A DNA stretch of 40,734 bases from Octopus bimaculoides. Taxonomy: Eukaryota. This document shows, piece by piece, positions 3,050 through 38,531 of the stretch (the stretch's first letter is position 1; each line of letters begins with the position of its first letter). The notes beneath the pieces were generated by a model. It did no database searches, was not told the DNA's origin, and worked only from the letters and a program-made list of their open reading frames with translations. The DNA is taken from positions 7,667,519 to 7,708,252 of the forward strand of contig NC_069003.1 of assembly GCF_001194135.2 (NCBI RefSeq). The letters run 5' to 3'. The position numbers and the translations under genes are program-made.

Positions 3050-3168
3050 AGAAGGGATTAAGTTGATTACATTGATCTCAGTGTACATCTGGTACTTATT
3101 TTATCGACCCCGAAAGGATGAAAGGCAAGTCGACCTCGGCGGAATCTGAACTCAGAACGTAGCGGCAC
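3050..3168 (-). mobile_element. SINE family A fragment
   Basis: Matches the family A body (TTCATCCTTTCGGGGTCGATAAAATAAGTACCAG on minus), with the tail variant also seen at 32324-32545. Confidence 0.8.
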
Positions 3169-3408: not shown

Positions 3409-3445
3409 ATACTACTACTACTACTAATAATAATAATAATAATAA

Positions 3446-3637
3446 TCCTTTCTACTATAGGTACAAGGCCTGAAATTTCGGGGGAGGGGATTAATCAATT
3501 ACATCGATCCCAGTACTCAACTGGTACTTATTTCATCGATCTTGAAAGGATGAAGCAGACCACGGCGGAATTTGAACTCAGAACGTGAAGACGGACGAAA
3601 TACCGCTTAGCATTTCGGTCGGGGCACTAACGATTCT
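3446..3637 (-). mobile_element. SINE family A with (ATT)n tail
   Basis: B-box-like GAGTTCAAATTCC on minus; (AAT)n/(ACT)n tail at 3410-3446. Confidence 0.85.
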
Positions 3638-3715
3638 GATTGTTTTATGATATATATAAATATCTCTTTCTCTGTCTCTCACCCCCTCTCTCTGCACACA
3701 CACACACACACACAC

Positions 3716-4719: not shown

Positions 4720-5125
4720 TACTCTTTACTCTTTTACTTGTTTCAGTCATTTGACTGCGGCCATGCTGGAGCACCGCCTTTAGTCGAATCAAATCGACCC
4801 CAGGACTTATTCTTTGTAAGCCTAGTACTTATTCTATCGGTCACTTTTTGCCGAACCGCTAAGTTACGGAGACCTAAGCACACCAGCATCGGTTGTCAAG
4901 CGATGTTGGGGGGACAAACACAGATACACAACATATACACACATACACATATATATATATACATATATACGACGGGCTTCTTTCAGTTTCCGTCTACCAA
5001 ATCCACTCACAAGGCTTTGGTCGGCCCGAGGCTATAGTAGAAGACACTTGCCCAAGGTGCCACGCAGTGGGACTGAACCCGGAACCATGTGGTTCGTAAG
5101 CAAGCTACTTACCACACAGCCACTC
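4720..5125 (-). mobile_element. SINE family B, full-length young composite copy (head/CORE-like module, internal AT/AC microsatellite, 3' module ending in (AAAGAGT)n)
   Basis: Complete structure visible; close to the copies at 34102-34447 (-) and 14237-14612 (+). Confidence 0.9.
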
Positions 5126-6499: not shown

Positions 6500-7240
6500 T
6501 TTTTCTTTTTGGCGTCTATTTGGTACCTTGAGTGTCATACAGCCATTCCATAGATTATTATAATCTGTCTGGTTCATGTTCTATGAATCTCTTCTTCAAT
6601 TGGTTTCTGTGTCTTTTTTCAATATCTTTTCTGCTTTAAATTTCGCAGATCATTTTTCCTATGTGCTTTGTAGTTTTTCCTTCTTCCGAGTATTGTTTTC
6701 CGTTTTTATACGACCTCATGTACACCTTATCACCAATTTTGAAAAAAATTTGTATTGTCTTTCCTAGTATTTTTTCTTTCCTCTCCAGGTAACAGTTTAT
6801 CAAAAACTGATTTCACCCCTCCCCCTCGCGAACATCAGTTAAGCTGGTGAGCTTCCTGTTGGTGTATTGGGATTCGGTGTCACCCTGCATAATGAGAACA
6901 GTAAAATGGAACTGCGAGCTTTGGGGGGCTCGTAAGCCATTACATCCTTTCATTGTTTAATATTTCATTTCGTATTTCATCATTCGTTTTATGTACTCCA
7001 CGTTTTGTGTTGTCTGCATACCCTTAGGAATTGCTGCAGAGCGACTTCGTCTTGTTTGCTTTTCCAAAGTTCTTCTAAAAATGTCCACAAAACGTTCTGT
7101 CTGTCCATTTTATCTGAGATGGTAAGGCGCTATCGTTTTATGTTCTACTGTGAACATTTCACAGAATTTTCTAAATTCACTGGACACAAATTGTGTTCCA
7201 TCATCAGATACAATTACGTTAGGGATGCCAATTTCTACAG
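6500..7240 (-). pseudogene. Gypsy integrase (rve core plus C-terminal region), decayed by stops, frameshifts and one insertion
   Basis: Minus-strand translation GIPNVIVSDDGTQFVSSEFRKFCEMFTVEHKTIAPYHLR*NGQTERFVDIFRRTL...DEVALQQFLRVC[insertion]RVTPNPNTPTGSSPA*LMFAR...KSVFDKLLPG...KRHRNQLKKRF fits the retroviral-type integrase SDNGxQF / PYHPxSNGxAERF motifs. Confidence 0.9.
6892..7013. mobile_element. 122-bp insertion in the integrase, flanked by a 7-bp direct repeat CTGCATA
   Basis: CTGCATA at 6885-6891 and 7014-7020; removing the insert and one repeat restores the in-frame LRVCRVTPN. Confidence 0.8.
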
Positions 7241-9736
7241 GCAATTTCTACACGTTAGAAGACAGTCAAAATGACCGAAAACCACAAAAAAAAGAAAACA
7301 ATTTCAAAGGGAAAGAAAAAATAAAAACTTTTTGAAGAGAATTTGCCTAATAAATTATTTTATTTACTAAAAGAATTCGAAACCCGTAAGTCTAACCGTG
7401 AAAACANNNNNNNNNNNNNNNNNNNNNNNNNNNNNNNNNNNNNNNNNNNNNNNNNNNNNNNNNNNNNNNNNNNNNNNNNNNNNNNNNNNNNNNNNNNNNN
7501 NNNNNNNNNNNNNNNNNNNNNNNNNNNNNNNNNNNNNNNNNNNNNNNNNNNNNNNNNNNNNNNNNNNNNNNNNNNNNNNNNNNNNNNNNNNNNNNNNNNN
7601 NNNNNNNNNNNNNNNNNNNNNNNNNNNNNNNNNNNNNNNNNNNNNNNNNNNNNNNNNNNNNNNNNNNNNNNNNNNNNNNNNNNNNNNNNNNNNNNNNNNN
7701 NNNNNNNNNNNNNNNNNNNNNNNNNNNNNNNNNNNNNNNNNNNNNNNNNNNNNNNNNNNNNNNNNNNNNNNNNNNNNNNNNNNNNNNNNNNNNNNNNNNN
7801 NNNNNNNNNNNNNNNNNNNNNNNNNNNNNNNNNNNNNNNNNNNNNNNNNNNNNNNNNNNNNNNNNNNNNNNNNNNNNNNNNNNNNNNNNNNNNNNNNNNN
7901 NNNNNNNNNNNNNNNNNNNNNNNNNNNNNNNNNNNNNNNNNNNNNNNNNNNNNNNNNNNNNNNNNNNNNNNNNNNNNNNNNNNNNNNNNNNNNNNNNNNN
8001 NNNNNNNNNNNNNNNNNNNNNNNNNNNNNNNNNNNNNNNNNNNNNNNNNNNNNNNNNNNNNNNNNNNNNNNNNNNNNNNNNNNNNNNNNNNNNNNNNNNN
8101 NNNNNNNNNNNNNNNNNNNNNNNNNNNNNNNNNNNNNNNNNNNNNNNNNNNNNNNNNNNNNNNNNNNNNNNNNNNNNNNNNNNNNNNNNNNNNTATATAT
8201 ACTTTTTATTGATATTTTCTTTTAAAATTAGATTTTAATGACATCATGTTTGAAATTTTAAGCTTTGTCCCTTTTTGTCAAACCCGAGAACAAAATACCG
8301 TTAACTTCCGGTATTCTCAAATCACTCGTCATCCTCTTTCAGGCGTAGTTCTAGCTTATTTCTACATTTTCTTTTCTCTTTATCTCGCCTCTCATTAAAT
8401 TGCTATATATTAACTATCTTGCCTTATCCTTTCATACTTATTCCATTTAATTAGAACATCTACTAGATTTAGCATGCACACAGAAAAATAAAAGTTCTTT
8501 CTGTTTATTTATATATTTATTCATTTATATATTTATTAGTTCTTATCAGCTCATCGTAGCTTATCTTCCGAAGCAATTCTTTAACACTTTCCAGATAGTT
8601 CGCTGTCATCGTTGATACATCTTGTCGTCTTTATCTTTTACAATCTTTCCAGTTTTGGTCGGCCAACCTCTCTCTATTTCTCCCTCTCATTCTGTTTGCC
8701 TGCCTCTTTCTTTCTCCCCCCCTCTCTCTCTGTCTTTGCCTCTCTCTATCCCTCCTTTTCTCTGTTGTTTGTGTGTGGACCAAACTGCATCCCCCACCTC
8801 ACTCATTGGGCTAATGCTAGGAAGGAAGAAGACAGCCGGAAGATGATATACTCTTTATGTCTCCTTAATCTCGGCTGTAGAGTCCTTGTGGCGGCAACTA
8901 TTATTAAGTACTGATTAACCTGTAACACTGAATCTAATTTCATTGACCCTCACGCACACGAAAAACATAACTTATTTAAATATCGTTTGTCATCACAATC
9001 GACAACAACGCCATCGGCGTTTATCATCTTTATAGTTACAGACGTTAAAGACTTCAGAGTAAAACCTCGTTAAAACCAGAGAAACCACTGACAATTGAAA
9101 GCGGGGAAATGGCAAACGTTTACGATACAAGAAGATTTTAGTTAGATTCATCCTCTTTTCTATTTCTTCAAAAACAATGTCACATTTTAAACTTTTGCAT
9201 ATTTTCACTCTTTCACTTCCATATTGTATCTGAATTGTGCGACTTGGTTGATTTCTTTTTCTGAAAATCCTACCTCATACGGATTGTCACTTAGGCATTT
9301 ACTCACAAAATCAAGCGCACCAATTACACTCCATAACAAAATGAAAGTTTCTTTAGCAAGATACAATCAACGTGATTTCAGCCAATTTAAGGCTGTTCTT
9401 TCTGAATATGAAATCAGTTTTGCTCCATCACATCTAGATTTTGATCTACAGGGCATACTTATATATCAAATTTACCGAAATATAATGTAGCATGCCGTAC
9501 GCCAAGCGTTCCTATTTGGTTTTAAAGATAGCGCTTGATTGTTCTTTTTGTGATAACCTTTAACGAGGGAGCTGTAAAAGTAGCTATAACACATATTAGA
9601 TCATGTCTATTTTTCGGACACTTTGATTTAAATGTGTGTTTCGGGTGTTATTGTGACTTTTATCAAATTAGTAATTGTTCTGTTCAACGTGGACTGCTGT
9701 TTGTTTTTTTCTCCGCTTTAATTTGCTTCAATTTGC

Positions 9737-10574: not shown

Positions 10575-10803
10575 AGTAACTCCCTATAATAAAGGTTTCA
10601 AATTTTGGTTCAAGGCCAGCAAGTTCGAGGTAAGGGGTAAGTCGGTTATATCGACTCCAGGGTTCATCTGGTACTTACTGTATCGACCTATAATGGATGA
10701 AAGGCAAAGTCGGCTCCTGCGGAATTTGAACTCAGAACGTAAAGATGAACGAAATGCTGCTAAGCATTCAACTCGGCTTCCTAACAATTCTGACAGCTCG
10801 CTG
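10575..10803 (-). mobile_element. SINE family A, diverged full-length copy
   Basis: Head, B-box and tail recognisable. Confidence 0.8.
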
Positions 10804-11089: not shown

Positions 11090-11443
11090 GACTGCTATAT
11101 TGGTACAATCATGACAGTACTATTAGTCAGTCCTCCTTGCCTTTCAACCTAATTAGGATCGATAAAATAAGCATAGAATGCCGAGCGCTAGGGCGTTTGT
11201 TCTTAATATTGCCTTTTGAATTATTTTTTTCGTTAAACACTCATTACTTTCGTTTTAGAATAAGGTTGATTTCCTGAGTTCGCAGCACGGTTCCCTCTTA
11301 TTTGGACAAGTCTTATTTCTAAATATCGTGGAATATTTACGTCGCAGCAAGTCATGATGTTTCTTGTTGTGTTGATTCTTGATTTAGCATCAGGCTGAAT
11401 GAGTTTATATAACAACTACAACAACAATAACAACAACAATAAT

Positions 11444-11656
11444 CATTTCTATTATAGGTATAAGGCTTGAAATTCCGGGGAGTGAGATAGTCGATTACAT
11501 CGACCCCCCCACCTCAGCACTCAAACTAGTACTTCGACCCCGAAGGGATGAAAAACAAAGCCGATCTTGGCGGAATTTGAACTGGGAACGTAAAAACGGA
11601 CGAAATGCCGCTATGCCTTTTGCCCGGAGTACTGACCATTCTGCCAGCTCGCCGCC

Positions 11657-11658
<2 letters not shown>
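11444..11658 (-). mobile_element. SINE family A, full-length
   Basis: GGCGGCGAGCTGGCAGAAT head on minus, with AAC/AAT tracts on both sides. Confidence 0.85.
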
Positions 11659-11700
<42 letters not shown>

Positions 11701-11704
<4 letters not shown>

Positions 11705-12402
11705 TAGAAAGGATTGAGGTAACTCCTCCTGAAGATATAGAGTCAAAATTAAAAGAAGAGTGCCATTTGTTATCTAGTGAACGATATTTCGACATCTCGT
11801 GTGTCTTCAACTGGTTCAAAAAATAAATTTGTCAATCTACTTCATTTTGGTTAATATAGAAAGGATTGAGGTAACTCCTCCTGTAGATATAGAGTCAAAA
11901 TTAAAAGAAGNNNNNNNNNNNNNNNNNNNNNNNNNNNNNNNNNNNNNNNNNNNNNNNNNNNNNNNNNNNNNNNNNNNNNNNNNNNNNNNNNNNNNNNNNN
12001 NNNNNNNNNNNNNNNNNNNNNNNNNNNNNNNNNNNNNNNNNNNNNNNNNNNNNNNNNNNNNNNNNNNNNNNNNNNNNNNNNNNNNNNNNNNNNNNNNNNN
12101 NNNNNNNNNNNNNNNNNNNNNNNNNNNNNNNNNNNNNNNNNNNNNNNNNNNNNNNNNNNNNNNNNNNNNNNNNNNNNNNNNNNNNNNNNNNNNNNNNNNN
12201 NNNNNNNNNNNNNNNNNNNNNNNNNNNNNNNNNNNNNNNNNNNNNNNNNNNNGATAACAAATGGCACTCTTCTTTTAATTTTGACTCTATATCTTCAGGA
12301 GGAGTTACCTCAATCCTTTCTATATTAACCAAAATGAAGTAGATTGACAAATTTATTTTTTGAACCAGTTGAAGACACACGAGATGTCGAAATATCGTTC
12401 AC

Positions 12403-12435: not shown

Positions 12436-12448
12436 TGATAATGATAAT

Positions 12449-12572
12449 CCATTCTACTGAAGGCACAAGACCTGAAATTTGTAGGGAGGGGACTAGTCGA
12501 TTACATTGACCCCAGTGTTTCACTGGTACTTAATTTATCGACCCCGAAAGGGTGAAAGGCAAAGTCGACCTC
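12449..12572 (-). mobile_element. SINE family A, 3' half
   Basis: Tail and body match; joined to a family C copy. Confidence 0.8.
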
Positions 12573-13232: not shown

Positions 13233-13266
<34 letters not shown>

Positions 13267-13267
<1 letters not shown>

Positions 13268-13445
13268 CCTTTCTACTATAGGCACAAGGCTTGAAATTTG
13301 GGGACAGGTGACTAGTCGATTACATCGACTCCAGTACTCAACTGATACTTATTTTATCCAACCCGAAAGGATGAAAGGCAAAGTCGACCTCACCGGAATT
13401 CGAACTCAGAACGTAAAGACGGAGGAAATGCCGCAAAGCATTACT
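13267..13445 (-). mobile_element. SINE family A with long (AAT)n tail
   Basis: Family A body match. Confidence 0.85.
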
Positions 13446-13894: not shown

Positions 13895-14135
13895 GACGGT
13901 TTCAAATTCTAACGCAAGGCCGGCAATTTTGCGGGGAAGGGTTAGGACGAAAGGCAAAATTGACCAAGGCGACATTTCAGCTCAGAACGGTAAAGATCTG
14001 GAAGAATTGCCTCTAAGCAATTTGTCCGACGCGCTAACGATTCTGCCAGATTACTGTCTTTTTTATGATTTCAAATTTTGACACAAGGCTTGCAATTTTG
14101 ATGGGAAGGAATGAGTCGATGATATCGATCCCTGT
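13895..14135 (-). mobile_element. SINE family A fragments (deleted copy 13895-14050 and a tail at 14075-14135)
   Basis: Diverged family A head and tail segments. Confidence 0.6.
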
Positions 14136-14236
14136 GCTTGGCCGGAGGTCAAACGATTCTGTCTGGGCGAATCTTATAAAAGTCATCGCTAACGTCATGG
14201 TTTTTGGTGTACTGATTGGCGGCAAATTAATTTGCT

Positions 14237-14612
14237 GGCTGTGTGTTAAGAAGCTTGCTTCCCAACCACATGGTTTTGGGTTCAGTCCTACTGCGTGGCA
14301 CTTCGGGCACGTGTCTTCTACGATAGCCTCGAGTCGACCAAAGCCTTGTGAATGGATTTGGTGGACAGAAACTGAAAGAAGCCCGCCGTGTATATGTATA
14401 TATATATATATATATACGCGCGTGTGTTCCACCTCCGCTTGAGAACCGGTGTTGGTGTGTTTACGTCCCCGTGACGTAGCGGTTCGGCAAAATGAACCGA
14501 TAGAATAAGTACTAAGCTTTAAAATGTCCTGTGGTCAAGTTGTTCGACTAAAACTCTGCAAGGCATTGCTCCAGCTTGGCCACAGTCAAGTGACTGAAAC
14601 AAGTAAGAAAAG
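14237..14612 (+). mobile_element. SINE family B, near full-length
   Basis: All three modules present. Confidence 0.85.
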
Positions 14613-17354: not shown

Positions 17355-17635
17355 TACCCTGCCACCGCTTGGCAACCGGTGTTGGTGTGTTTACGTCTCC
17401 GTAAATTAGTGGTTCGGTAAAAGGGTCCGATAGAACAAGTACCAGGCTTGAAATACTTGGTGTCATTTCTTCCGGATTTACGTTCTGATTTCGAATTCCA
17501 CCGAGGTAGACTTCGCCTTTCATCCTTTCGGAATCGATAAAATAAGTACCAATTGAGCACTGGGATCGATATAATCGACTACCCTCCCCCCTCCGAATTT
17601 TAGGTCTGTGCCTATAGTAGAGAGGATTATTTTCT
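17355..17635 (+). mobile_element. SINE family B 3' module (17355-17460) followed by a family A body and tail (17470-17635)
   Basis: Direct similarity to other copies in the window. Confidence 0.8.
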
Positions 17636-17658
17636 ATATAAAATATAGACATTAATAT

Positions 17659-17873
17659 TCTTTTCTACTCTAGGCACGAGGCCCGAAATTTTGGGGGAGG
17701 GGGCCGGTCGATTAGATCGATCCCAGCACGCAACTGGTACTTAATTTATCGGCCCTGAAAGGATGAAAGGCAAAGTCGACCTCGGCGGAATTTGAACTCA
17801 GAACGTAACGACAGACGAAATACCGCTAAGCATTTCGCCCAGCGTGCTAACGTTTCTGCCAGCTCGCCGCCCT
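17659..17873 (-). mobile_element. SINE family A, young full-length copy with a 19-bp TSD
   Basis: AAAATATAGACATTAATAT (17640-17658) and AAAATATAGAAATTAATAT (17874-17892) flank the element. Confidence 0.92.
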
Positions 17874-17904
17874 AAAATATAGAAATTAATATGGACGTTA
17901 GCGA

Positions 17905-18455
17905 ATCGTTTGCTTACTAGGGTCGATCTAATCGACTGTCCCCGTCCCCCAAAATTTCGAGCCTTGTACCTAGAGTAGAAAAGATTATGTATTGTTGGTA
18001 AGGCGGCGAGCTGGCGGAAACGTTAGCACGTCGAGCGAAATGCTTAGCAGTATTTCGTCTGGCTTTACGCTCTGAGTTCAAATTCCGCCGAGGTCGATTT
18101 TGCCTTTCATCCTTTTGGAGTGGATAAATTAAGCACCAGTTGCGTAGTGGGGTAGATCTAAGCGACTGGTTCCCCCACCCAAATTTCGGGCCTTGTGCCT
18201 AGAGTAGAAAAGATTATGTATTGTTAGTACGGCGGCGAGCTGGCAGAAATGTTAAAACGCCGCGCGAAATGCTTAGCGGTATTCCGCCTGTCTTCATGTT
18301 CTGAGTTCAAATTCCGCCGAGGTCGATTTTGCCTTTCATCCTTTCGGAGTCGATAAATTAAGTACCAGTTGCGTACTGGTGTCAATCTAATCGACTGGCC
18401 CCCTCCCCCAAAATTGCGGGCCTTGTGTCTAGAGTAGAAAAGATTATGTATTGTT
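17905..18455 (+). mobile_element. Tandem SINE family A array: a tail plus two full-length copies, period about 230 bp
   Basis: The junction AGAGTAGAAAAGATTATGTATTGTT starts at 17972, 18201 and 18431. Confidence 0.9.
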
Positions 18456-37499: not shown

Positions 37500-37723
37500 A
37501 TATATGAGTGTATATGTATGTATATATGTATGAATATGTATACATTATGAATGTATATACATAAACCTATATACGTGTGTATATATATACATATATATAT
37601 ATATATATCGCTCAGAGATTTAACATAACGTCTCTCTCTCTCTCTTTTACGAGATCAGCGACCGTGAGTCGCTAGAAAAGTATATAGTAATTTGCGAGTG
37701 GAATGAACTTCCATCACTAGCTA

Positions 37724-37782
37724 GTGATTAACACATGCTGAGGACGGGTAACCACCCAGAAACTCGAGTCCGTGTGTATCAC
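37724..37782 (+). ncRNA. Type I hammerhead ribozyme, minimal/dimer type, predicted cleavage after C37770 (GUC)
   Basis: Stem I ACACATG(37731-37)/CGTGTGT(37771-77), plus a 2-nt bulge and GTGAT/ATCAC; core CTGAGGA 37738-44; stem II (C.A)GGGT-AACC-ACCC; GAAA 37759-62; palindromic stem III ACTCGAGT; GTC triplet. Confidence 0.88.
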
Positions 37783-37850
37783 GTAAGGCTAGAGATGGGA
37801 GCGATGACCTCACCTCGCAAATACTAATCGGACACAGACTGTGTGTCATT

Positions 37851-37924
37851 AGAACGTAAAGACGACCGAAATGCCGCAAAGCATTTTGGCCAGTATGCTA
37901 ATATTTCTGCCAGCTCGCTGCCTT
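37851..37924 (-). mobile_element. SINE family A head fragment
   Basis: GGCAGCGAGCTGGCAGAAATATTAGCA on minus. Confidence 0.75.
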
Positions 37925-37956
37925 AATAATAATAATAATAAGAAGAAGAAGAAGAA

Positions 37957-38306
37957 GAAGAGCACTCAGAGAGCGCAAACCTGCGCCATGGCAACACCAA
38001 TGTCCTCTCAACGATTAGCTAGAGATGATTTTTTAAATGAGAATATCTGAAATAAATTCGACTGCTCTCACAAACGAGAATACTTAAAATGAACCCGACC
38101 GCTCTCAAAAATTGATTTAAAAAATAGGAGAAATCATCCAGATTGATCCCCAAATCTAATTAGTTCGTGCCAGTTACGAGGCCAAACATCCCTGAAAGTT
38201 TCATCCGAATCCATCCAGCAGTTCTTGAGATATCATGTCCACGGATAAACAAACAAACAAACACGACTGAAAACAATACCTCCGCCTTCGCTAGGGCGGA
38301 GGTAAT
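37957..38306 (+). mobile_element. Non-autonomous Helentron-type element (HINE-like) with a 3' stem-loop
   Basis: 5' ACCTGCGCC (37979-87); internal (AAAC)n; terminal perfect 10-bp hairpin TACCTCCGCC-ttcgctag-GGCGGAGGTA (38277-38304); inserted in an AAT/AAG tract. Confidence 0.65.
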
Positions 38307-38311
38307 AATAA

Positions 38312-38531
38312 TCTTTCTTCTCTAGGCACAAAGCCTGAAATTTTTGGGAAGAGGACTGGTTGATTACATTGACCCCAGTGCTCGACTGGTACTTATCTTA
38401 TCTTTTTTGTCGACCCCGAAAGGATAAAAGACAAAGTCGACCTTAGCGGAATTTGAACTCAGAACGTAAGGACGGATGAAATGTCTCTAAGCTTTTTGCT
38501 TGGCGTGCTAACGATTCTGCCAGCTCGCCGC
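38312..38531 (-). mobile_element. SINE family A, full-length
   Basis: Family A head, body and tail. Confidence 0.85.

What the first reader, a model, noticed from the sequence alone, without database searches (positions are those of the whole stretch)
37640..37850. Near-intact hammerhead ribozyme capping a viroid-like rod: candidate octopus retrozyme
Seen in sequence: every conserved hammerhead core base is present (CUGAGGA, GAAA, GUC). Stem I has 7 bp, a 2-nt bulge and 5 bp; stem II has 4 bp plus a C.A; stem III is the 8-nt palindrome ACTCGAGT, which leaves no room for a stable monomer loop. Beyond stem I the flanks keep pairing: TTCCATCACTAGCT (37709-22) with GGCTAGAGATGGGA (37787-800), 13 of 14 pairs, and TAGTAATTTGCGAG (37685-98) with CTCGCAAATACTA (37814-26), one bulge. 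So 37685-37826 folds as a rod capped by the ribozyme. Small hairpins sit on each side (AGCGAC/GTCGCT and GACACA/TGTGTC). Established: short type I hammerheads with a palindromic stem III occur in Penelope-like elements and cleave as dimers, and metazoan non-LTR retrozymes are short, highly base-paired hammerhead repeats that yield circular RNAs. Inference: this ~200-bp non-coding unit is a retrozyme monomer or Penelope pLTR derivative that may still self-cleave.
Basis: partly seen in the sequence, partly recalled or inferred. Interest (0 to 1): 0.88.

Follow-up and report, generated by a model that had tools for sequence, protein, structure and literature searches.

The report
Relic hammerhead ribozyme repeat in octopus
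The hammerhead self-cleaving RNA motif is really there and belongs to an old dispersed repeat family, but this is a lone, cut-off copy of a well-known kind of animal mobile-element ribozyme, not a demonstrated retrozyme.

Summary
Window 37731-37777 (+) has every invariant hammerhead core base, a 7-bp stem I, a 4-bp stem II and the palindrome ACUCGAGU. It caps a 49-bp hairpin (37685-37826; z about -5 against shuffles). It is the only such motif in the window and is not expected by chance. Rfam gives only a sub-threshold hit to Hammerhead_1 (18 bits against a cut-off of 34).

The unit occurs once in 40 kb and is not tandem. No Penelope-like reading frame lies nearby. Four homologous copies in three public contigs, two of them near-identical (64-79% identical to each other and to the window), show a dispersed family of about 310 bp with the ribozyme in the middle. 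The window copy loses homology at about 37852, where it abuts a fragment of an abundant octopus SINE on the opposite strand.

The relatives have damaged cores or stems, and their hairpins are no more stable than shuffled sequence. The window copy is simply the least decayed (6% from the majority sequence).

The predicted monomer fold hides the core; a dimer through the palindrome could expose it.

Verdict: a new member of a known kind, a solo relic. Cleavage is untested. Interest is modest.

The parts
37611..37634 (+). 5' block of the repeat family (CGCTCAGAGATTTAACATAACGT), directly after a (TA)n microsatellite
   Evidence: Homologous to L114 copy A (BLAST from 37602; alignment; nhmmer from 37615).
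37635..37650 (+). (CT)8 tract; the relatives have a T/C-rich tract here (TTCCTCACTTTT, or T10)
37657..37673 (+). Left hairpin, AGCGAC / GTCGCT
   Evidence: Folds. L116 keeps it with three changes on both sides. It is also the only helix of the named structure that RNAalifold predicts.
37685..37730 (+). Left arm of the rod
   Evidence: Pairs with 37778-37826. Rod z = -5.15.
37731..37737 (+). Hammerhead stem I, 5' strand (ACACAUG)
   Evidence: 7 bp with 37771-77. The family majority is ACACACG; the window has a CpG to TpG change that keeps the pair as G.U.
37738..37744 (+). Core box CUGAGGA (C3 to A9)
   Evidence: Intact as CUGAAGA in both L114 copies; CUGCAGA in L116.
37745..37758 (+). Stem II: C, then GGGU-AACC-ACCC, then A (4 bp, a 4-nt loop, flanked by a C.A)
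   Evidence: The flanking C...A is present in the window and both L114 copies; L116 has G...A.
37759..37762 (+). Core box GAAA (G12, A13, A14, A15.1)
37762..37769 (+). Helix III palindrome ACUCGAGU (2-3 bp plus a palindromic loop within one molecule; 8 bp between two molecules)
   Evidence: The same helix III sequence occurs in real type I hammerhead families from metagenomes.
37770..37771 (+). Predicted cleavage site, 3' of C17 (C37770)
   Evidence: Inferred from the position of the motif; not tested.
37771..37826 (+). Stem I 3' strand (CGUGUGU) followed by the right arm of the rod
37831..37847 (+). Right hairpin, GACACA / TGTGTC
   Evidence: 83% of cells are paired across the four copies.
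37847..37853 (.). Breakpoint. Family homology ends here and SINE homology begins; the two share the letters AGA(A)C
   Evidence: The relatives continue for about 70 nt that the window lacks.
37851..37925 (-). Positions 1-75 of an abundant tRNA-like octopus SINE, cut just before its B-box-like GAGTTCAAATTCC. It is a neighbour of the hammerhead element, not part of it
   Evidence: 81% identity to a full copy. There are 15 copies in the window.
37924..37961 (.). (TAA)n(GAA)n microsatellite next to the SINE head

Best explanation
The window holds one solo copy of an old, dispersed, non-coding repeat family of about 310 bp in octopus-like genomes. The founder of that family carried a standard animal type I hammerhead ribozyme at the tip of a long hairpin.

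Shown:
- The motif is present and is not due to chance.
- Homologous copies exist elsewhere with the ribozyme in the same central position.
- This copy is the least diverged of those seen.
- Its 3' end is missing. It abuts a SINE fragment lying on the other strand.

Inferred:
- The family spread by retrotransposition as a whole unit, probably borrowing the enzymes of a Penelope-like element, as proposed for animal hammerhead repeats.
- A later deletion with a few bases of microhomology joined this copy to a nearby SINE.
- If transcribed, a single RNA mostly folds into an inactive rod in which CUGAG pairs with CUCGAG.
- Two RNAs could pair through the 8-nt palindrome to form a double hammerhead that cuts after C37770.
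- With one site per transcript, cleavage would split the RNA and could not release a circle.
For: The motif is real:
- Motif and statistics.
- It is the only Rfam match to the slice. RF00163 aligns over the full model 1-45 at 18 bits.
- That score is comparable to a clearly real 20-copy metagenome family, which reaches only 19.6 bits on HH9.

A family exists:
- An exhaustive protein search with the antisense reading frame found two Logan reading frames.
- Their DNA gives four copies at 64-79% identity. L114 and its near-identical twin L115 carry two copies; L116 carries one.
- All copies have the same order of parts: 5' block, pyrimidine tract, left hairpin, left arm, hammerhead, right arm, right hairpin.
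- The three copies outside the window share about 70 nt of 3' tail ending ...TCCTTTATAGGA, after which they diverge.

The founder was probably intact:
- The majority sequence has CUGAAGA, GGGU/ACCC and GAAA, and a helix III that can pair. Its stem I is ACACACG with one tied position, against CGUGUGU.
- Helix III is kept with different letters: C-G and U-A here, C-G and U.G in copy A, U-A and C-G in L116.
- 8 pairs have changes on both sides; only 10 of 500 shuffles reach that, and slid controls give 1-5.

This copy is a relic:
- It differs from the majority at 9 of 141 sites, against 17-30 of 141-150 for the others.
- An intact 12-base core is therefore expected without selection (0.936^12 is about 0.45).

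Dimer dependence on thermodynamic grounds:
- The active monomer fold is about -14 kcal/mol against a monomer minimum of -20.8.
- The domain-swapped double hammerhead is -43.9 against 2 x -20.8.

Literature:
- Animal type I hammerheads typically have helix I of 6 bp, helix II of 4 bp and helix III of 1-2 bp with a palindromic loop, and act as dimers (PMC4209133).
- Solo monomer copies of retrozyme families are common (10.64898/2026.07.22.740005).
Against: - Only four copies could be compared, from three contigs (two of them near-identical). The species behind two of the source samples is unknown.
- No reverse transcriptase partner, target-site duplication or tail was identified, so retrotransposition is inferred only from dispersal and the shared 3' end.
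- The two copies in L114 lie head to head, as Penelope-like insertions often do. However, they are less alike (72%) than either is to the window copy (78%), so they are not products of one insertion event.
- The rod is strong only in the window copy. An unbiased consensus fold does not recover it.
- The extra C and A flanking stem II separate G10.1-C11.1 from the core and may weaken catalysis.
- The Rfam score is below the curated cut-off.
Confidence: 0.6

Rival explanations
1. It is the terminal repeat (pLTR) or 3' end of an autonomous Penelope-like element, and the solo copies are 5'-truncated insertions.
For: - Animal hammerheads sit in Penelope-like pLTRs, and most occur as single motifs thought to be truncated elements (PMC4209133).
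- Retrozyme families are sister to pLTRs (10.64898/2026.07.22.740005).
- O. vulgaris has Penelope-like elements, with an expansion at JC distance about 0.2 (PMC13282606).
- The copies share a 3' end without a poly(A) or microsatellite tail.
- One copy is 5'-truncated and inverted against another.
- There is an extra nucleotide between A9 and G10.1, as reported for Penelope-like hammerheads.
- The window copy starts at a (TA)n microsatellite, a preferred Penelope-like target.
Against: - No RT or GIY-YIG signal in reading frames from 34.2 to 40.7 kb, and nothing recognisable by eye elsewhere in the window.
- None in L114 or L116 either.
- The helix sizes are those of the canonical animal motif, not of the 'minimal' Penelope-like one (helix II 6-8 bp, helix I 4-5 bp, no helix III).
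- Three copies extend to the same 5' region, where variable truncation points would be expected.
- No Penelope-like sequence from octopus could be fetched for comparison.
Confidence: 0.2
2. It is a member of an active non-LTR retrozyme family. Elsewhere in the genome the unit stands in tandem, is cut at each hammerhead and is ligated into a circular RNA of about 300 nt. This copy would be a stray monomer.
For: - The unit size of about 310 nt, the GC content of 45%, the type I hammerhead and the highly self-paired fold all fit the published description (PMC7229834).
- Monomer derivatives are known for such families.
Against: - No tandem copy in the window, in L114/L115 or in L116.
- All copies seen are old (pairwise JC distance 0.25-0.5) and the others have damaged cores.
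- Every copy has the same termini with the ribozyme in the centre. Copies made from cleaved or circular monomers should be permuted or should end at the cleavage site.
Confidence: 0.1
3. It is a chance hammerhead look-alike inside an inverted-repeat (foldback or MITE-like) element. The arms supply 'stem I' for free and there was never a ribozyme.
For: - Both strands fold equally well.
- Only 4 of 49 pairs are G.U, so there is no strand asymmetry.
- The Rfam score is sub-threshold.
Against: - The core boxes, stem II and a pairing helix III are shared by the family majority sequence.
- Helix III co-varies.
- The family termini are not inverted repeats.
- Even with stem I given for free, a 33-nt centre carrying 11 fixed core bases plus two helices is expected in about 1 in 10^8 to 10^9 inverted repeats. 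This is my own estimate from base frequencies.
- 0 of 300 shuffles match the strict descriptor.
Confidence: 0.05
4. It is the body of a chimeric SINE. The tRNA-like head at 37925-37851 (minus strand) would drive Pol III transcription through the unit, comparable to the hammerhead-bearing Sm-alpha SINE of Schistosoma.
For: The SINE head abuts the unit exactly, with no spacer.
Against: - The head is on the opposite strand, so such a transcript would carry the antisense of the ribozyme.
- The head lacks the B-box-like segment.
- None of the three related contigs has the SINE head at that junction; they continue with the family's own 70-nt tail.
- The junction shows microhomology typical of a deletion.
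Confidence: 0.03

Closest known systems
Canonical metazoan type I hammerhead ribozymes (Rfam RF00163), as in newt satellite 2, the Schistosoma Sm-alpha element, and coral and mussel repeats
   Same: - All invariant core bases are present.
- Stem I has a 5'-strand bulge followed by a second helix.
- Stem II is 4 bp.
- Helix III is very short and palindromic, which implies action as a dimer.
- The Rfam consensus helix III is itself a loopless palindrome (ACGcgCGU).
- The identical helix III, ACUCGAGU, occurs in real families from metagenomes.
   Different: - A C and an A flank stem II, so G10.1-C11.1 is not adjacent to the core.
- Stem I is 7 bp before the bulge, where 6 is usual.
- The score is 18 bits against the cut-off of 34.
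- No loop-loop contact could be assessed.
Non-LTR retrozymes of animals (Cervera and de la Pena 2020, PMC7229834)
   Same: A short non-coding unit (about 310 bp in the relatives) with moderate GC, a type I hammerhead and a strongly self-paired predicted fold in the window copy.
   Different: - It is not tandem in any of the four copies seen.
- The copies share fixed ends with the ribozyme in the middle.
- The family looks old and decayed.
- There are no expression or circularity data.
Hammerheads in the pseudo-LTRs of Penelope-like elements (Cervera and de la Pena 2014, PMC4209133)
   Same: - Dispersed single motifs.
- An extra nucleotide after A9.
- A palindromic helix III.
- Neighbouring microsatellites.
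- One inverted, 5'-truncated neighbour copy in L114.
   Different: - No RT or GIY-YIG frame nearby.
- The helix sizes are canonical, not 'minimal'.
- The inverted pair is not a sister pair.
Viroid-like rods of Avsunviroidae and plant retrozyme circles
   Same: In the most stable fold the hammerhead sequences are sequestered in a long, imperfect hairpin.
   Different: - This is genomic DNA of an animal.
- There is one ribozyme, of one polarity.
- There is no evidence of a circle or of RNA replication.
- The rod is not stable in the homologous copies.

Membership tests
Hammerhead ribozyme, type I (Rfam RF00163) | Invariant core: C3 U4 G5 A6 N7 G8 A9, G12 A13 A14, A15.1-U16.1, H17 | tested here: met
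   37738-44 is CUGAGGA, 37759-62 is GAAA, U37769 follows, and C37770 is H17.
Hammerhead ribozyme, type I (Rfam RF00163) | Three helices around the core, with helix I open-ended (type I topology) | tested here: met
   Stem I is 7 bp, stem II is 4 bp, and helix III is 2-3 bp or an 8-nt palindrome. The descriptor hit is unique in the window.
Hammerhead ribozyme, type I (Rfam RF00163) | Covariance-model score at or above the curated gathering score (34 bits) | tested here: not met
   No hit at gathering score. 18.0 bits, E = 0.028, over the full model 1-45, and only in an 81-nt slice. As yardsticks, the tandem L003 motif scores 34.9 bits and a real 20-copy family reaches only 19.6 bits on HH9.
Hammerhead ribozyme, type I (Rfam RF00163) | A G10.1-C11.1 pair stacked directly on the core | tested here: inconclusive
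   G37746-C37757 exists but is separated from A9 and G12 by C37745 and A37758. An extra 5' nucleotide here is described for Penelope-like and some canonical hammerheads, and axolotl HHR_Amex2 has a U.U at this place. The flank is present in the window and both L114 copies; L116 has G...A.
Hammerhead ribozyme, type I (Rfam RF00163) | Site-specific self-cleavage | not testable with these tools
   Only energy models are available. The active monomer fold is about 7 kcal/mol above the minimum, and the double hammerhead is competitive.
Non-LTR retrozyme | Head-to-tail tandem repeats of about 170-400 bp, each with a hammerhead | tested here: not met
   One copy in 40.7 kb, of which 3.5 kb is N. L114 has an inverted pair and L116 a solo copy. 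The genome as a whole could not be searched.
Non-LTR retrozyme | Expression as linear and circular RNA of unit length | not testable with these tools
   No RNA data could be reached.
Non-LTR retrozyme | A stable, highly self-paired unit with GC below about 50% | tested here: inconclusive
   The window copy has z = -4.7 to -5.15 and GC of 45.5%. The relatives give z = +0.5, +0.7 and -0.6, and the consensus fold lacks the rod.
Penelope-like element pLTR | Flanks an ORF with a telomerase-like RT and a GIY-YIG endonuclease, usually as two direct repeats about 3 kb apart | tested here: not met
   No Pfam domain in reading frames from 34.2 to 40.7 kb. No second copy in the window. No ORF in L114 or L116. 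Degraded remnants cannot be excluded.
Penelope-like element pLTR | 'Minimal' hammerhead: helix II 6-8 bp, helix I 4-5 bp, no or minimal helix III, extra base after A9 | tested here: not met
   Helix II is 4 bp and helix I is 7 bp. Only the extra base and the palindromic helix III agree (compared with PMC4209133).
Penelope-like element pLTR | Sequence homology to the termini of Penelope-like elements of the same genome | not testable with these tools
Hammerhead-bearing SINE (Sm-alpha type) | A Pol III (tRNA-like) head on the same strand, upstream of the ribozyme | tested here: not met
   The only tRNA-like SINE head lies downstream, on the opposite strand, and is truncated before its B-box-like segment. 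It is absent from the homologous copies.

The most novel reading that the evidence does not exclude
Cephalopods carry a distinct class of hammerhead retroelement. It would be a unit of about 310 nt that transposes whole, not as a ribozyme-cut circle. A dimer-dependent type I hammerhead caps a selected long hairpin. A few young copies, of which this would be one, still cleave and process host or read-through transcripts.
Probability: 0.12. Interest if true: 0.55.

Novelty: new member of a known kind. Interest (0 to 1): 0.3.

Why it matters
Type I hammerheads in animal repeats have been known since 1987 and are counted in thousands to over 100,000 per genome in some species. One more copy is therefore not surprising.

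The modest value is threefold. First, no paper in the searched library describes a hammerhead in an octopus. Second, this family keeps the ribozyme in the middle of a fixed-ended, dispersed unit and not in tandem arrays. That bears on the open question of how retrozymes, Penelope-like elements and solo hammerheads are related. Third, the window copy is a ready test substrate for dimer-dependent cleavage.

It does not open a new question.

Tried and rejected
- Rfam at gathering score over the whole window found nothing. A 501-nt permissive scan returned only AT-rich microRNA look-alikes from the flanking microsatellite, which I rejected as low-complexity noise.
- An exact look-up of the 52-aa antisense ORF, and later of two neighbouring ORFs, found no record.
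- A word-indexed protein search with the 58-aa frame found nothing. A control search with an abundant octopus repeat returned only 3 proteins. That database therefore says nothing about the copy number of non-coding repeats.
- A metagenome scan with a family-specific pattern gave 0 hits. A viral-contig scan gave 0 hits.
- The generic core plus helix III pattern matched 113 metagenome stretches. About 25 are real hammerheads, but none is homologous to this unit in stem I or the flanks. None of the hammerhead-bearing loci I checked has a Penelope-like ORF that could have served as a seed.
- A profile search (nhmmer) of the four-copy alignment found no further copy in the window, in the metagenome loci, or in 40 kb of O. 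vulgaris.
- A literature search for the two SRA run numbers gave no hit, so the species of L114-L116 is unknown.
- The idea that the SINE was inserted into the element was rejected. The rest of the SINE is not on the other side, and a possible resumption of the family tail at about 37985-38012 is too weak to call.
- The MITE reading was rejected because the family ends are not inverted repeats.
- ARAGORN finds no tRNA in the window.

Full report
**1. The observation**

I read 37400-38100 and checked each claim. The core boxes are CUGAGGA (37738-44), GAAA (37759-62) and GUC ending at C37770.

- Stem I is ACACAUG (37731-37) with CGUGUGU (37771-77). A UA bulge follows, then 5 bp.
- Stem II is GGGU/ACCC with loop AACC. 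It is flanked by C37745 and A37758.
- Helix III is the palindrome ACUCGAGU (37762-69).
The minimum-energy fold of 37680-37830 has 49 pairs, of which 4 are G.U.

The 211-nt unit folds at -74.5 kcal/mol (z = -4.7; 0 of 200 shuffles as stable). The opposite strand folds at -72.7 (z = -4.6).

A hammerhead descriptor finds one hit in 40.7 kb on both strands, and it is this one. Dinucleotide-preserving shuffles gave 0.013 relaxed hits per window and 0 of 300 strict hits.

**2. Rfam**

Nothing reaches the gathering score. A 501-nt permissive scan shows only AT-rich microRNA look-alikes in the neighbouring microsatellite.

An 81-nt slice gives a single match: RF00163 Hammerhead_1 at 37732-37776 (+), full model 1-45, 18.0 bits (cut-off 34), E = 0.028. 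The model treats stem II as a local insertion, because the extra C and A displace it from the core. The Rfam consensus helix III is itself a loopless palindrome.

A tandem metagenome hammerhead with the same helix III (L003) scores 34.9 bits. An obviously real family of 20 or more copies reaches only 19.6 bits, on the HH9 model. The sub-threshold score therefore weakens the case but does not exclude it.

**3. What kind of hammerhead**

According to PMC4209133, most animal type I hammerheads have these features:

- helix I of 6 bp;
- helix II of 4 bp;
- helix III of 1-2 bp capped by a 2-4-nt palindromic loop;
- poor activity as a single motif, with cleavage as a dimer.

The 'minimal' motifs of Penelope-like elements differ. 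They have a long helix II (6-8 bp), a short helix I (4-5 bp), no helix III, and an extra base after A9.

The window motif has the canonical helix sizes plus that extra base.

Energy models agree with dimer dependence. The active monomer fold is about -14 kcal/mol. The monomer minimum is -20.8 and pairs GCUGAG with CUCGAGU. A domain-swapped double hammerhead with an 8-bp intermolecular helix III is -43.9, against -41.6 for two monomers. These are predictions, not measurements.

**4. Surroundings**

The window is repeat-rich, 33% GC, and has ten runs of N. I saw no convincing gene.

The unit occurs once in the window. Immediately to its right, 37851-37925 matches positions 1-75 of a SINE of about 222 bp that has 15 copies in the window. 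That fragment has three notable properties:

- It lies on the minus strand.
- It stops just before the SINE's B-box-like GAGTTCAAATTCC.
- It is followed by (TAA)n(GAA)n.

To the left of the unit lie (TA)n and (CT)8. Reading frames from 34.2 to 40.7 kb have no Pfam domain, so no Penelope-like reverse transcriptase or endonuclease is nearby.

**5. Organism**

A repeat-derived ORF from the window hits only Octopus vulgaris and O. bimaculoides predicted proteins. The same SINE recurs seven times in 40 kb of O. vulgaris chromosomes. The 'octopus' label is supported.

**6. Relatives**

Direct DNA scans of metagenomes and viral contigs with a family-specific pattern found nothing.

An exhaustive HMMER search with the 58-aa antisense reading frame (37897-37724) found two reading frames, at 74% and 56% identity. 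Both come from Logan assemblies. Their contigs, L114 and L115 (near-identical, 1.1 kb) and L116 (1.8 kb), carry the element:

- L114 copy A aligns to window 37602-37852.
- L114 copy B aligns to 37707-37853. It is 5'-truncated and lies head to head with copy A.
- The L116 copy aligns to 37714-37850 by BLAST, and over the full length by profile.

Pairwise identities are 64-79%.

All homology to the window stops at about 37852. The three outside copies, however, share about 70 further nucleotides ending ...TCCTTTATAGGA. The family unit is therefore about 310 bp, and the window copy lacks its 3' tail.

The element and the SINE share AGA(A)C at the junction. The simplest reading is a deletion with microhomology that joined a full element to a nearby SINE of opposite orientation. 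The SINE is a neighbour, not a part of the element.

**7. What the relatives say about the ribozyme**

The majority sequence is ...ACACNCG CUGAAGA C GGNU AACC ACCC A GAAA CUCNGGUC CGUGUGU..., where N marks a position tied two against two among the four copies. Both tied positions include the base that would complete the pairing, so an intact hammerhead founder is likely.

The C...A around stem II is present in the window and both L114 copies; L116 has G...A. It is probably ancestral.

The individual relatives are damaged:

- Copy A has an A.C in stem II and a mismatch at the base of stem I.
- Copy B has lost helix III and two stem I pairs.
- L116 has CUGCAGA and AAAA in place of the core boxes.

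Helix III is kept with different letters in three of the four copies.

On the structure I named, 81% of cells pair, against 32-50% in slid controls. Eight pairs change on both sides, which 10 of 500 shuffles reach. That structure was derived from the window sequence, so these numbers lean towards it.

Against conservation of the rod:

- The relatives' own folds are no better than shuffles (z = +0.5, +0.7 and -0.6).
- Consensus sequences fold only weakly (z = -0.6 to -1.75).
- RNAalifold recovers the left hairpin but not the rod or the hammerhead.

The window copy is the least diverged, at 9 of 141 differences from the majority against 17-30 for the others. At that divergence an intact 12-base core is expected by chance about 45% of the time. 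The intactness therefore needs no selection.

Several differences are CpG decay. For example, the majority ACACACG became ACACATG here and ACACACA in two relatives.

**8. Mechanism**

Most likely the element is a dead or dying copy of a non-autonomous retroelement whose founder carried a working dimer-dependent hammerhead.

All copies keep the ribozyme central between the same ends. The transposing form was therefore the whole unit, not a ribozyme-cut monomer or a permuted circle.

A link to Penelope-like elements is plausible for four reasons:

- The literature ties animal hammerheads and retrozymes to pLTRs.
- O. vulgaris has Penelope-like elements.
- The copies have no A-rich tail.
- Microsatellites lie next to the window copy.

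It is not shown, however. The head-to-head pair in L114 is not a sister pair, because its two copies are 72% identical while each is 78% identical to the window copy.

A lone site cannot release a circle. At most, cleavage would split a transcript after C37770.

**9. Comparison and novelty**

This is a new member of a known kind: animal type I hammerheads in repeats. I found no paper describing one in an octopus.

It fails the defining tandem test for a non-LTR retrozyme and the ORF-adjacency test for a Penelope-like pLTR, as far as these could be tested here. The genome as a whole could not be searched.

Interest is modest. Both are real in this copy, but they are adequately explained by a young-looking survivor of an old family.

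Noticed in passing
window 3062-3167, 3440-3638, 10613-10801, 11438-11659, 12444-12572, 13261-13442, 13944-14049, 17450-18447 (five adjacent copies), 32314-32465, 37851-37925, 38306-38531: An abundant SINE of about 222 bp with a tRNA-like head (B-box-like GAGTTCAAATTCC) and an (ATT)n tail: 15 full or partial copies in 40 kb, including a cluster of direct and inverted copies at 17.4-18.4 kb. The same family occurs in O. vulgaris chromosomes (L117 and L118). ARAGORN and Rfam do not call it a tRNA.
   Followed up: partly
window about 76-300, 4878-5096, 14037-14534, 28401-28649, 28872-29054, 34238-34429: A second interspersed repeat whose translation (...HQIHSQGFGRLEAIVEDTCPKCHAVGLNP...) recurs on both strands. 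It has been annotated as 'hypothetical protein' in O. vulgaris and sits inside an O. bimaculoides UBC-domain protein model. That is probably repeat contamination of gene models.
   Followed up: partly
window about 6960-7250, minus strand: A fragment of a retroviral-type integrase core (Pfam rve, 28.6 bits, below the cut-off of 32.6) split over two frames. It is a decayed LTR-retrotransposon remnant.
   Followed up: partly
window 11799-12380, either side of the N run 11911-12252: The same ORF text (MCLQLVQKINLSIYFILVNIERIEVTPP.DIESKLKE...) reads inward from both strands across the gap. This is an inverted duplication or an assembly artefact at the gap.
   Followed up: no
window about 26850-27280 and about 35400-35700: Two copies of another repeat (translation ...VECSATCTLISRAGCSVD(Q/R)INW...). 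The second borders the N run 35214-35394.
   Followed up: no
loci L014, L016, L021, L023, L039, L043, L050, L054, L065, L075, L084, L092, L107, L108, L111 and L068 (metagenome samples Ga0126336 and Ga0126342): A dispersed family of canonical type I hammerheads (GGAGCAA CUGAUGAG GUUC-ACUGAA-GAAC CGAAACUCGAGUC UUGCUU) with more than 100 nt of conserved flanks on each side and one motif per contig. Rfam gives it only 19.6 bits, on HH9. It presumably comes from an invertebrate host in those samples.
   Followed up: partly
L003 267-310 and 929-972 (minus strand): Two identical type I hammerheads 662 nt apart in direct orientation on a 1.3-kb metagenome contig. They are the only motifs seen here that reach the RF00163 gathering score (34.9 bits). 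The contig looks like a tandem retrozyme.
   Followed up: partly
window 37961-37982: GCACTCAGAGAGCGC, just after the microsatellite, shares the 8-mer CTCAGAGA with the 5' block of the hammerhead element (37613-37620). It is too short to tell whether it is a remnant of a second copy or chance.
   Followed up: no
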